Virus record (IMG/VR): IMGVR_UViG_3300013104_000001
Coordinates: 1-64,000 of that record
Length of the DNA stretch: 64,000 nt
Strand: one strand, 5' to 3'
The translations under genes and the position numbers were made by a program. The notes below the pieces were generated by a model. That model was given only the letters and a program-made list of their open reading frames with translations. It was not told the DNA's origin and searched no databases. Positions 49,803-63,762 of this stretch are shown here, in pieces (position 1 is the first letter of the stretch; each line of letters starts with the position of its first letter).

Positions 49803-50264
49803 ATGTCACAAGAACCAAAAATAACTATCCCGTATCTGCACTTTTCACTCACCGCCTTTCGTGACTTTATTATCGCGAACGATATGACACCGTATATCGT
49901 GGTAAAACCGATTCCTGGTGCCGATGAAGTTCTTGACCAATATGTCAAAGAAGGCACTGTAACGCTGAACCTGAGCCCTACAGCGTGTCGCTCGTATCAG
50001 ATCAGTGAAGAAGGCTACATGATCGTTGAACAGCGCTTCAACGGTAAGCCACATCGCGCTTACATCCCTGTGGGTTGGGTGCTGGCTATGTTTGCCCGTG
50101 AGAATCCACAGATCGGCATGGGGTTCGATGGTGATATCTTTGGCACCCCAATCAACGATGGTAAAACAACACCTTCTGTATTTGACACACCTGTTGTAGA
50201 AACTGCTGAAGAGACGAGCAACGTCACACCACTTCGGAAAAGTGGACTGAGCGTCGTCAAGTAA
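49803..50264 (+). CDS. sspB: stringent starvation protein B (ClpXP adaptor) homolog
   Basis: TPYIVV, VKEGTVTLNLSP.A, RFNG, IP...VLA.FARE; C-terminal LSVVK like the LRVVK ClpX-binding tail. Confidence 0.88.
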   Translation: MSQEPKITIPYLHFSLTAFRDFIIANDMTPYIVVKPIPGADEVLDQYVKEGTVTLNLSPTACRSYQISEEGYMIVEQRFNGKPHRAYIPVGWVLAMFARENPQIGMGFDGDIFGTPINDGKTTPSVFDTPVVETAEETSNVTPLRKSGLSVVK

Positions 50265-62381: not shown

Positions 62382-62672
62382 ATGGCCTTTGCCCTTGATG
62401 CAAAACTCGTTCCATTCCTGTTCAAAACAAAAGATGGTCGTCTGTACGCTAATGTGTCTGGCGGTAACAAAACCAAACTGGTCATCTCAATGGACCAGGG
62501 CCTGACTCAAGAGTTAGGTGCGCCTGCACAGGACGTTCCACTCGAAGCGCGTGTCAATGGCACGAAGCTGTACTTCAGTCCACAAGGCGAAGTGACAGGC
62601 TGGGATATCCCTGAGAAGAAAGTAGCTGACGCAGCTACTGCCGGTTCGATGAACATGCGTCGTCCAGGCTAA
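62382..62672 (+). CDS. hypothetical protein
   Basis: AAGGA RBS. Confidence 0.7.
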   Translation: MAFALDAKLVPFLFKTKDGRLYANVSGGNKTKLVISMDQGLTQELGAPAQDVPLEARVNGTKLYFSPQGEVTGWDIPEKKVADAATAGSMNMRRPG

Positions 62673-62680
62673 TCCATGCG

Positions 62681-62706
62681 GGGAGGGGAAACCCTCCCTT
62701 ATGCCG
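62681..62706 (+). terminator. hairpin + TTATGCCG element
   Basis: GGGAGGG-GAAA-CCCTCCC-TTATGCCG. Confidence 0.8.
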
Positions 62707-62718
62707 TTTGGGGGTTAT

Positions 62719-63246
62719 ATGAGTTTAGTGATTTACAAAGACGGGTTATTAGTCGGGGACAGACATGGCTCACGTTATGTTGCCTCTTTTGACATGGTGC
62801 GTGATGTCGTGAAGCTCTATAAGTCTAAGTGTGGCAGGATAGCACTAGCGGTTACCGGGCAAGTGTTGACTGATGAAGATCTACAAAAAGCATTTGATTT
62901 CTTCATTAACTCGGTTACTGACTATCATTACCGTCATCTGGATTTGGACTACAGCAACAGATACGCCGAGGAAGATGCACTACGTATGGGGATGACGGGT
63001 CGTCACTTCATGATCATGACCCGCTCGCATATCTTCGCAGTTGAAGCAGGTATGTTGATCGATCTCAGTAATGAACCTTGGTACGCGACGGGTAGCGGGC
63101 AAGTAATGGCAGATATTTTCTTAACTGCGGGTTACTCGCCACAAAAGACCGTTGAGAATGTATCTAAAATTAACCAAGAAGTCAGCAAGCGTTTTACCCT
63201 TATCAATCAGGCTACGTTGAAGCCGCTTATTAAAGAGGTGGTATAA
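62719..63246 (+). CDS. Ntn-hydrolase (HslV/proteasome beta-like) protein
   Basis: M-SLVIYKDGLLVGD N-terminus, IALAVTG, YATGSG, C-terminal V....KI helix; GGGGG RBS before ATG 62719. Confidence 0.65.
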   Translation: MSLVIYKDGLLVGDRHGSRYVASFDMVRDVVKLYKSKCGRIALAVTGQVLTDEDLQKAFDFFINSVTDYHYRHLDLDYSNRYAEEDALRMGMTGRHFMIMTRSHIFAVEAGMLIDLSNEPWYATGSGQVMADIFLTAGYSPQKTVENVSKINQEVSKRFTLINQATLKPLIKEVV

Positions 63247-63762
63247 ATGAGTAGTATCTTTGCCATCTCAGGCGATAACGTGGTTTACGCGCATCAACTG
63301 CTTAAGCTGAATGGCTTGCCGTTCACACCGGGTGAAGGTTCGTTATGGACACCGTGCGGTCGGTTCTTTCCTGTTTCACATCAGGGGCTGGCCTTGCTCG
63401 AGTATTTCCTTGAGCCGGGCAAACTGTCAGTTGATAGCTCCTACAACAACTACGTTTTAGGTATTCTGGCAACACCACATGGATTGTTGTACGAATACAC
63501 GTTGGTTGACAGTTGTGTTACTCGTCGTATTATCCCTCGTGGGAAAGGACTGCGCTACTGTCGTTCTAACGACCCTCAACTTGAGGAGTGCATGCAAGCC
63601 GCAATGGAAATCCATACCGAGCTTGTTGATGCCATGGACCTGGTTGCTAAATCTCGCAAGATCTTATTGAATGCGTACAAGTATACACTGTTGACTAATG
63701 TATATGCTGAAATGGCCGAGCGAAAGATCATCGGGAAACCGCCTTCGCTTATGCAAGCGTAA
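63247..63762 (+). CDS. hypothetical protein; possible degenerate Ntn-fold paralog
   Basis: M-SSIFAISGDNVVYA start and C-terminal ..AAMEI...V.AMDLVAK helices echo the upstream gene; GAGGT RBS. Confidence 0.5.
   Translation: MSSIFAISGDNVVYAHQLLKLNGLPFTPGEGSLWTPCGRFFPVSHQGLALLEYFLEPGKLSVDSSYNNYVLGILATPHGLLYEYTLVDSCVTRRIIPRGKGLRYCRSNDPQLEECMQAAMEIHTELVDAMDLVAKSRKILLNAYKYTLLTNVYAEMAERKIIGKPPSLMQA

What the first reader, a model, noticed from the sequence alone, without database searches (positions are those of the whole stretch)
62719..63762. Tandem proteasome/HslV-like pair: one Ser-nucleophile subunit and one degenerate partner
Seen: the first protein begins M-S-L-V-I-Y-K-D-G-L-L-V-G-D (canonical M-T-T-I...AD) and keeps TGSG. 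The abutting second protein begins M-S-S-I-F-A-I-S-G-D and ends in similar helices but lacks GSG. Established: Ntn proteases use the N-terminal Thr (or Ser/Cys), and 20S proteasomes pair active beta with inactive alpha subunits. Inference: a phage hetero-oligomeric mini-proteasome or amidase, potentially removing ubiquitin-like or other defence conjugates.
Basis: partly seen in the sequence, partly recalled or inferred. Interest (0 to 1): 0.6.

Follow-up and report, generated by a model that had tools for sequence, protein, structure and literature searches.

The report
Jumbo-phage HslV-like protease with dead partner
A giant nucleus-forming phage carries two back-to-back genes of the proteasome/HslV fold, one with an intact serine active site and one that has lost it. 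The pair always travels together in many uncultured giant phages, which points to a two-subunit phage protease that nobody has yet studied.

Summary
Window 62719-63246 (A, 175 aa) and 63247-63762 (B, 171 aa) are real, abutting genes.

**A** is an HslV-like N-terminal-nucleophile peptidase homologue.
- It matches PHROG 'peptidase HslV family' at 1.8e-10.
- Its AF2 model matches E. coli HslV at Z 14.9, with Ser2 lying on Thr1.
- The Ser/Thr1, Asp, Lys, Gly and G-x-G positions are conserved.

**B** has no sequence similarity to A or to any named family.
- Its confident model (pLDDT 91.9) returns only Ntn hydrolases in an unbiased fold search, with proteasome-family chains on top (Z 7-8).
- The position that lies on the nucleophile is mostly Asn across 96 relatives, so B is a dead Ntn-fold protein.

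**The pairing is obligate.**
- In 11 of 11 sampled metagenomic loci and three cultured jumbo-phage genera, an A-like gene sits directly upstream of B, usually overlapping it by 4 nt.
- A small, about 96-aa gene upstream is also conserved.

**Not shown:** physical association (the complex prediction gave no verdict), peptidase activity, and substrates. Nothing supports a role in removing ubiquitin-like conjugates.

**Context:** the phage encodes chimallin and an HslU-like ATPase, but other carriers of the pair lack the ATPase.

**Verdict:** a new variant of a known kind, of moderate interest.

The parts
62382..62672 (+). Small upstream gene U (96 aa, phrog_11059), a conserved third member of the module. 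It has a structured N-terminal part and a basic, probably disordered C-terminal tail with a G-S-x3-R motif. Function unknown.
   Evidence: ORF. phrog_11059 at 1.2e-32. Homologous to the 93-111 aa gene directly upstream of the A-like gene in about 12 of 14 loci (alignment A7). No Pfam, NCBIfam, PDB or Atlas lead.
62678..62699 (+). Conserved G+C-rich hairpin (GGGGAGGG-GAAA-CCCTCCC) between U and A. It is probably a terminator or attenuator, or another RNA element that sets the expression of A/B relative to U.
   Evidence: Sequence. Fold -21.1 kcal/mol, but z is only -1.64. Conserved in L005, AH06 and RAY with shifted but complementary arms, although the flanking proteins are only about 50% identical (A8). 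Moabite's annotators marked a terminator at the same place. The generic terminator scan did not call it, because there is no T run.
62710..62714 (+). Shine-Dalgarno (GGGGG here; GGAGG in AH06 and RAY), 4 nt before the ATG at 62719.
62719..63246 (+). Gene A: HslV-like N-terminal Ser peptidase homologue (175 aa). Proposed catalytic residues are Ser2 (mature Ser1), Asp14, Lys32, Gly47 and Gly125-Ser126-Gly127.
   Evidence: phrog_1040 'peptidase HslV family' at 1.8e-10. AF2 pLDDT 88.2. Foldseek hit to HslV 1m4y, E 1.5e-8. VIA hit to E. coli HslV: Z 14.9, rmsd 3.2, 149 aa, with residue 2 on Thr1. The profile against PDB sequences hits HslV/CodW at E 1.8e-4, with Asp, Lys, Gly and GSG aligned. Conservation table.
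63247..63762 (+). Gene B: catalytically degenerate Ntn-fold (proteasome-like) partner (171 aa), a member of a wide, unnamed phage family.
   Evidence: phrog_8172 at 5.1e-44. No Pfam or NCBIfam match. 95 relatives found. AF2 pLDDT 91.9, pTM 0.88. In the unbiased VIA search, ranks 1-48 of the 50 rows listed are Ntn hydrolases, with the proteasome family at ranks 1-15 (Z 6.4-7.8), and residue 3 lies on the nucleophile. Second look: Anbu Z 8.4. Column 3 across 96 sequences is Asn 36, Ser 13, Met 10, Thr 8, Gly 7.

Best explanation
U-A-B is a conserved accessory module of chimallin-encoding jumbo phages and their uncultured relatives.

**Shown**
- A is a homologue of the bacterial HslV peptidase. 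All residues needed for N-terminal-nucleophile catalysis are conserved: Ser or Thr right after the initiator Met, plus Asp, Lys, the oxyanion Gly and G-x-G.
- B has the same Ntn alpha-beta-beta-alpha fold but no conserved nucleophile.
- The two genes are always adjacent, in the same order, and usually overlap by 4 nt.

**Inferred**
- Methionine aminopeptidase exposes Ser1 of A.
- A and B are made in matched amounts by translational coupling.
- They assemble into a proteasome-family ring particle in which A supplies the active sites.
- B is a structural or regulatory pseudo-subunit. It could shape or gate the chamber, dock an unfoldase or substrates, or limit A's activity, much as inactive alpha subunits or inactive beta subunits do in 20S proteasomes.
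- The particle degrades host or phage proteins or peptides during infection.
- It is fed either by the host's HslU or, in this clade, by the phage's own HslU-like ATPase.

The substrates and the benefit to the phage are unknown.
For: **A is HslV-like**
- phrog_1040 at 1.8e-10.
- That profile hits only this gene in the 287-kb genome, and it also hits HslV or proteasome genes in control genomes.
- Foldseek best hit is HslV, E 1.5e-8.
- Z 14.9 to E. coli HslV, with Ser2 on Thr1.
- The HMM alignment to HslV/CodW puts Asp14, Lys32, Gly47 and G-S-G on the catalytic positions.
- Across 16 diverse homologues the N-terminus is M-Ser (9) or M-Thr (7). Asp is 16/16, Lys 15/16 and Gly47 16/16.
- Ser in the Thr1/Ser1 position is accepted for proteasome-like homologues (PMC8665760). 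An essential Ser2 is reported for B. subtilis CodW (PMC7468587, citing Kang 2001).

**B is Ntn-fold but dead**
-.

**The pairing is obligate**
- Agricanvirus, Moabitevirus and Iapetusvirus records.
- 11 of 11 metagenomic loci picked from diverse B relatives.
- The overlap is 4 nt in 10 of 16 loci.

**Context**
- The genome has chimallin (79% identical to RAY's).
- It has an HslU-like ATPase (TIGR00390 at 8.9e-77).
- It has an SspB homologue.
- A and B are only 48-58% identical to their Agricanvirus homologues, which fits fast-evolving accessory genes.
Against: - No direct evidence that A and B touch. The complex prediction scored 0.55, but a control with an unrelated protein in place of A scored 0.50, so there is no verdict.
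- No fused A-B protein appeared among the 95 B relatives.
- B's fold match is middling (Z 7-8.4) and it has no sequence-level link to the proteasome family. The call rests on a predicted model.
- A does not reach Pfam PF00227 or any NCBIfam model.
- Activity is untested, and Ser nucleophiles are poorer than Thr in proteasomes (my own recollection of published beta5-T1S mutant work; not checked here).
- Moabite, 2050HW and PhiEaH1 carry A/B but no HslU-like gene, so the phage ATPase cannot be a general partner.
- RAY's HslU-like gp116 is reported inside the phage nucleus (bioRxiv 10.1101/2023.02.24.529968). The location of A/B is unknown.
Confidence: 0.55

Rival explanations
1. A works on its own as a homo-oligomeric HslV-like protease, activated by host HslU. 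B is a separate factor that merely reuses the Ntn fold. It could be a decoy or inhibitor that binds the host's HslU or HslV, or that keeps A inactive until needed.
For: HslV and BPH are homo-oligomers (PMC8665760). B has its own conserved surface motifs unrelated to catalysis: K/R20-x-N22, T35-P-x-G38-x3-P42, R94-R95, R106-S107 and E113. In the complex job, B scored almost as high with an unrelated protein, so that job provides no specific support for A-B binding.
Against: Strict adjacency, fixed order and start/stop overlap across roughly 20-30% identity divergence are more typical of subunits of one complex. An inhibitor of a host protein would not need to stay linked to A in every lineage.
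Confidence: 0.25
2. The module is not a protein-degrading machine. A, with B, is a specific amidase, a processing peptidase, or a connectase-like ligase or transpeptidase. It would act on one defined target, possibly the co-encoded small protein U with its conserved tail.
For: The proteasome-like family includes the ligase connectase, and connectase is among B's best fold matches (Z 8.0). U is conserved next to A/B and has a conserved tail motif. No unfoldase is conserved with the pair.
Against: A is closest to HslV, not connectase, and keeps the compact HslV architecture. Nothing links U to A/B beyond synteny, and a hairpin separates U from A.
Confidence: 0.12
3. One reading: the pair removes ubiquitin-like or other defence conjugates (Bil, CBASS Cap2-type) as a counter-defence.
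For: Only general grounds. The genes are fast-evolving accessory genes in a phage. There is also a faint E2-like sequence motif in B (E 1.1).
Against: No JAB/MPN, cysteine-protease, E1/E2 or Ubl domain is in or beside the module. The E2-like motif is not an E2 fold. Known deconjugases of these systems belong to other folds (from general knowledge; not tested here).
Confidence: 0.05

Closest known systems
Bacterial HslV (ClpQ) / B. subtilis CodW, peptidase of the HslUV protease (MEROPS T1B)
   Same: A shares the compact fold (Z 14.9, 149 of 175 residues), with the nucleophile directly after the initiator Met and Asp/Lys/Gly/G-S-G in register. An essential Ser2 is reported for CodW (PMC7468587). 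This phage also has an HslU-like ATPase.
   Different: A is below the Pfam and NCBIfam thresholds. It is about 12-16% identical to HslV in the structural alignments. The hairpin before the catalytic Asp is about 3-4 residues shorter, as judged by eye from the numbering (Asp14 against Asp17). A is always paired with a dead Ntn-fold partner, which HslV does not have. HslU is not adjacent, and other carriers of the pair lack it.
20S proteasome alpha/beta architecture, including inactive eukaryotic beta subunits
   Same: One active and one inactive subunit of the same fold are encoded together. B's best matches include 20S alpha and beta chains.
   Different: B lacks the N-terminal helix extension that PMC8665760 describes for alpha subunits, because its fold begins at residue 3. 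B shows no sequence kinship to alpha or beta subunits. Co-assembly and ring number are unknown.
Phage-borne proteasome homologues PPH, AAH and CPH (Fuchs, Alva & Lupas 2021, PMC8665760)
   Same: These are uncharacterised proteasome-like proteins carried by tailed phages, placed in 'group I' near HslV and BPH. PPH lacks helix H2, as the B model does.
   Different: That survey describes single genes with the catalytic triad. It does not mention operons or hetero-oligomers, and 'inactive' occurs there only for alpha subunits and unassembled subunits. PPH is about 140 aa, whereas A is 175 aa with an H2-like helix. I could not test membership of A or B in those clusters, because no reference sequences were on hand.
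Anbu, BPH and connectase (bacterial and archaeal proteasome-like proteins)
   Same: They are among the top structural matches of B: Anbu Z 8.4, connectase Z 8.0, BPH Foldseek probability 0.97.
   Different: Those proteins keep Thr1. B does not, and B is shorter and lacks their insertions.

Membership tests
Proteasome/HslV family (Ntn hydrolase, Pfam PF00227, MEROPS T1): protein A | Ntn alpha-beta-beta-alpha sandwich fold | tested here: met
   AF2 pLDDT 88.2. HslV Z 14.9, rmsd 3.2, 149 aa. Foldseek E 1.5e-8.
Proteasome/HslV family: protein A | Thr/Ser nucleophile that becomes residue 1 of the mature chain | tested here: met
   Ser2 follows the initiator Met and lies on Thr1 of HslV. Ser (9) or Thr (7) in 16 homologues. 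Removal of the Met is inferred, not shown.
Proteasome/HslV family: protein A | Asp17, Lys33, Gly47 and the G-S-G loop | tested here: met
   The HMM alignment to HslV/CodW puts Asp14, Lys32, Gly47 and G125-S-G127 on these positions. They are conserved in 15-16 of 16 sequences.
Proteasome/HslV family: protein A | Score over the curated Pfam or NCBIfam threshold | tested here: not met
   No Pfam or NCBIfam hit. PF00227 finds nothing in the genome. Only PHROG phrog_1040 (1.8e-10) and the profile-to-PDB hit at 1.8e-4 link A by sequence.
Proteasome/HslV family: protein A | Peptidase activity; double-ring oligomer; activation by HslU | not testable with these tools
   Needs biochemistry and structure work. 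An HslU-like gene exists in this genome but not in all carriers of the pair.
Proteasome/HslV family: protein B | Ntn alpha-beta-beta-alpha fold | tested here: met
   AF2 pLDDT 91.9. In the unbiased search of 48,161 chains, ranks 1-48 of the 50 rows listed are Ntn hydrolases, with the proteasome family at ranks 1-15 and a best Z of 7.8. The Z is middling, so the call rests on the uniformity of the list and the consistent register.
Proteasome/HslV family: protein B | Conserved N-terminal Thr/Ser/Cys nucleophile | tested here: not met
   The residue on the nucleophile position (residue 3) is Asn 36, Ser 13, Met 10, Thr 8, Gly 7 across 96 sequences. It is preceded by two residues, not only Met.
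Proteasome/HslV family: protein B | Asp17/Lys33/G-S-G equivalents | tested here: inconclusive
   No GSG motif. The stretch before helix 110-122 is R106-S107-x-D. No conserved Asp follows strand 2. The residue-level structural mapping could not be inspected.
Alpha/beta-type hetero-oligomeric proteasome particle | Active and inactive subunits assemble in one particle | tested here: inconclusive
   Complex prediction gave no verdict (0.55 against a control of 0.50). The only evidence is strict synteny with start/stop overlap.
PPH / AAH / CPH phage proteasome homologues (PMC8665760) | Sequence clustering with the published representatives | not tested
   No such Pfam domain in A, B or the neighbouring genes. 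B's weak Ubc6 hit (E 1.1) is contradicted by its Ntn fold.

The most novel reading that the evidence does not exclude
Nucleus-forming jumbo phages and their uncultured relatives build their own two-subunit proteasome-family particle: an active Ser/Thr-1 HslV-like subunit plus a dedicated inactive Ntn-fold subunit. This would be an independent invention of the active/inactive division of labour seen in 20S proteasomes. The phage would use it, with host HslU or a phage HslU-like ATPase, to reshape the proteome of the infected cell, for example by removing host defence or stress proteins.
Probability: 0.3. Interest if true: 0.75.

Novelty: new variant of a known kind. Interest (0 to 1): 0.55.

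Why it matters
Phage-borne proteasome homologues are catalogued but none has a known function. The survey that listed them (PMC8665760) describes single genes only.

A dead Ntn-fold partner that is always coupled to the active gene would be the first heteromeric HslV-type system. It would give a concrete, testable handle on what giant phages do with their own proteolysis genes, because culturable models exist: Erwinia phage RAY gp56/gp57, Serratia phage Moabite and Erwinia phage PhiEaH1.

It also gives a fold and a likely role to a family of at least 95 sequence clusters that carries no annotation today.

Tried and rejected
- **Complex prediction of A with B: no verdict.** Scores were 0.54-0.55, but a control with A replaced by an unrelated protein scored 0.50. 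It is not evidence either way.
- **E2/UEV idea for B.** It came from a weak profile hit to Ubc6 (E 1.1). The Ntn fold rejects it.
- **Direct sequence kinship of A and B.**
  - BLASTP found nothing.
  - Shallow hhalign gave probability 0.1%.
  - Deep hhalign gave only 10% probability over the C-terminal helices.
- **B's profile against PDB sequences:** nothing meaningful.
- **Searches for more relatives.**
  - The word-index searches gave only close relatives.
  - The search for related loci with broad alignments failed for lack of conserved stretches.
- **Downstream genes** are not conserved beyond close relatives.
- **The small protein U:** no lead from NCBIfam, the Atlas, PDB or Pfam.
- **Phage HslU-like ATPase as a general partner:** rejected, because Moabite, 2050HW and PhiEaH1 lack it.
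- **A quick pattern count for a 'hairpin + TTATG' signal** used a pattern that does not even match the site itself, so it says nothing.
- **Literature:** no paper found on RAY gp56/gp57 or on a phage HslV-like pair.

Full report
**1. The observation**

- The + strand has two abutting ORFs.
- A, read from ATG 62719, gives 175 aa starting MSLVIYKDGLLVGD and containing YATGSGQ.
- B (63247-63762, 171 aa) starts MSSIFAISGD one base after A's TAA and has no GSG.
- An upstream in-frame ATG at 62701 would add MPFGGY.
  - Aligned with the same region of three related phages, this stretch is a nearly invariant nucleotide block. It holds GGAGG/GGGGG 4-7 nt before the second ATG and lies right behind a conserved hairpin.
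  - Distant homologues begin directly with M-S or M-T. One of them does so only after correcting a mis-called start to a GTG.

**2. Where the window comes from**

- The window is the first 64 kb of a 287,406-bp virus record with terminal repeats.
- A and B are 48-58% identical to adjacent genes of Agricanvirus phages of Erwinia (Ea35-70, RAY gp56/gp57, AH06 gp60/gp61).
- AH06's annotators already called the A homologue a 'proteasome-like hydrolase'.
- The genome encodes a chimallin 79% identical to RAY's nuclear shell protein, so it is a nucleus-forming jumbo phage of that lineage.
- A and B are much less conserved than chimallin, as expected for accessory genes.

**3. Protein A**

- Pfam and NCBIfam find nothing.
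- PHROGs gives phrog_1040 'peptidase HslV family' at 1.8e-10. That profile hits only this gene in the genome, and it also hits HslV or proteasome genes in control genomes.
- An AF2 model built on 16 diverse homologues (pLDDT 88.2) matches HslV best.
  - Foldseek: T. maritima HslV, E 1.5e-8.
  - VIA: E. coli HslV, Z 14.9, rmsd 3.2 over 149 residues, with model residue 2 on Thr1.
- A profile of the family hits HslV/CodW sequences in the PDB at E 1.8e-4. That alignment puts Asp14, Lys32, Gly47 and G125-S-G127 on Asp17, Lys33, the oxyanion Gly and the G-S-G loop.
- Across 16 homologues the second residue is Ser (9) or Thr (7). Asp and Gly47 are invariant and Lys is present in 15.
- Ser in the Thr1/Ser1 position is accepted for proteasome-like homologues (PMC8665760). 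An essential Ser2 is reported for B. subtilis CodW (PMC7468587).
- A is therefore a divergent but catalytically equipped HslV-like protein. Activity itself is inferred.

**4. Protein B**

- B has no Pfam, NCBIfam or PDB sequence match. It shows no detectable similarity to A beyond a 10%-probability alignment of the C-terminal helices.
- A profile search of 1.84 billion cluster representatives found 95 relatives, nearly all 157-227 aa and matched end to end. None has a recurrent Pfam domain.
- With this alignment AF2 gives a confident model (pLDDT 91.9, pTM 0.88).
- Foldseek's best matches are all proteasome-family chains, but weak (BPH E 6.5e-3).
- On a second look they reach Z 7-8.4: Anbu 8.4, connectase 8.0, HslV 7-7.8, 20S beta about 7.2.
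- The search that does not depend on Foldseek is the most telling. Of 48,161 representative chains, ranks 1-48 of the 50 rows listed are Ntn hydrolases, and ranks 1-15 are proteasome-family. B's residue 3 repeatedly lies on the nucleophile residue 1.
- The Z values are middling, so this is a fold assignment from a predicted model, not proof of homology.
- Column statistics over 96 sequences show no conserved nucleophile there: Asn 36, Ser 13, Met 10, Thr 8, Gly 7.
- They do show other conserved positions: K/R20-x-N22, T35-P-x-G38-x3-P42, R94-R95, R106-S107 and E113.
- B is best described as a pseudo-enzyme of the Ntn fold.
- An early E2-like hint is refuted by the fold.

**5. The pairing**

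- In Agricanvirus, Moabitevirus and Iapetusvirus records, the B homologue lies directly downstream of a gene annotated, or alignable, as an HslV-family peptidase.
- I looked up the contigs of 11 B relatives, picked by eye from across the hit list. All 11 have a 172-223 aa gene immediately upstream.
- The ten with DNA available align as A-like proteins.
- A's stop and B's start overlap by 4 nt in 10 of 16 loci, and by 0-26 nt overall.
- No A-B fusion was seen.
- A third gene, U (window 62382-62672, 96 aa, phrog_11059), is homologous in about 12 of 14 loci.
- U is separated from A by the conserved hairpin.
- Genes downstream of B are not conserved.

**6. Possible partners**

- The genome has an HslU-like AAA+ protein of 577 aa at 103566-105299, outside the window (TIGR00390 at 8.9e-77, below the equivalog cut-off).
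- By annotation and gene order this is presumably the homologue of RAY gp116, which Prichard et al. located in the phage nucleus (10.1101/2023.02.24.529968).
- AH06 and RAY have it. Moabite, 2050HW and PhiEaH1 do not, yet they keep A/B. The phage ATPase therefore cannot be an obligate partner.
- The host's HslU remains possible, because Enterobacterales generally carry hslVU (general knowledge; not tested here).
- An SspB homologue lies at window ~49866-50135. SspB genes also sit near the module in two metagenomic loci.

**7. Mechanism and rivals**

- The best-supported reading is a translationally coupled two-subunit proteasome-family peptidase, with A active and B an inert structural or regulatory subunit.
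- Shown: fold, residues and synteny.
- Inferred: assembly, activity and substrates.
- The single complex prediction gave no verdict.
- Rivals:
  - A acts alone, and B is an independent decoy or regulator.
  - The pair is a specific processing enzyme or ligase, perhaps acting on U.

**8. Novelty**

- Phage proteasome homologues are known as sequence families (PPH, AAH, CPH; PMC8665760).
- HslV-like genes are already annotated in related jumbo phages (PMC7823757).
- I found no report of the dead Ntn-fold partner, of the obligate pair, or of RAY gp56/gp57.
- The literature search covers open-access papers and preprints only.
- I rate it a new variant of a known kind.

**9. Limits**

- No expression data were obtained.
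- Model coordinates could not be inspected residue by residue.
- Membership of A or B in the published PPH, AAH or CPH clusters was not tested.

Noticed in passing
window 62382-62672 (+): A 96-aa protein (phrog_11059) with a conserved basic C-terminal tail (G-S-x3-R) is homologous to the small gene directly upstream of the HslV-like gene in about 12 of 14 loci. It is probably a third member of the module, with unknown function.
   Followed up: partly
window 62678-62718 (+): A G+C-rich hairpin, then an invariant TTATGCCGT, then a Shine-Dalgarno. The block is conserved at the nucleotide level in L005, AH06 and RAY, with shifted but complementary arms, although the flanking proteins are only about 50% identical. 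It may be a terminator or attenuator, or another regulatory RNA signal. The ATG at 62701 inside it is probably not a start codon.
   Followed up: partly
own genome G000 103566-105299 (outside the window; L023:1351-3084): An HslU-like AAA+ ATPase of 577 aa (TIGR00390 at 8.9e-77, below the equivalog cut-off) with a long insertion, presumably the homologue of nuclear-localised RAY gp116. It is present in AH06 and RAY and absent from Moabite, 2050HW and PhiEaH1.
   Followed up: partly
window ~49866-50135 (+); also L015:1370-1777: An SspB (ClpXP adaptor) homologue lies about 12.6 kb upstream. SspB genes also lie within 1-2 kb of the module in two metagenomic loci, which hints at a loose cluster of proteolysis-related genes.
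   Followed up: no
own genome G000 205887-208046: A chimallin homologue 79% identical to RAY gp222, so the phage belongs to the nucleus-forming lineage. A and B (48-58% identical to their Agricanvirus homologues) evolve much faster than this core gene.
   Followed up: yes
L018:2405-3004: The HslV-like gene on this 228-kb metagenomic contig was called from an internal ATG. A GTG 11 codons upstream restores the family's MTTIAY N-terminus.
   Followed up: yes
window 63265-63390 (B residues 19-64): The motif LPxTP...TPxGRFxP resembles the E2 (Ubc6) YPxxPP...TPNGRF region (E 1.1). The predicted fold shows it is not a UBC domain, but the T-P-x-G-x3-P core is the most conserved part of family B (Gly 90/96, Pro 88/96) and is a candidate interface.
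   Followed up: partly
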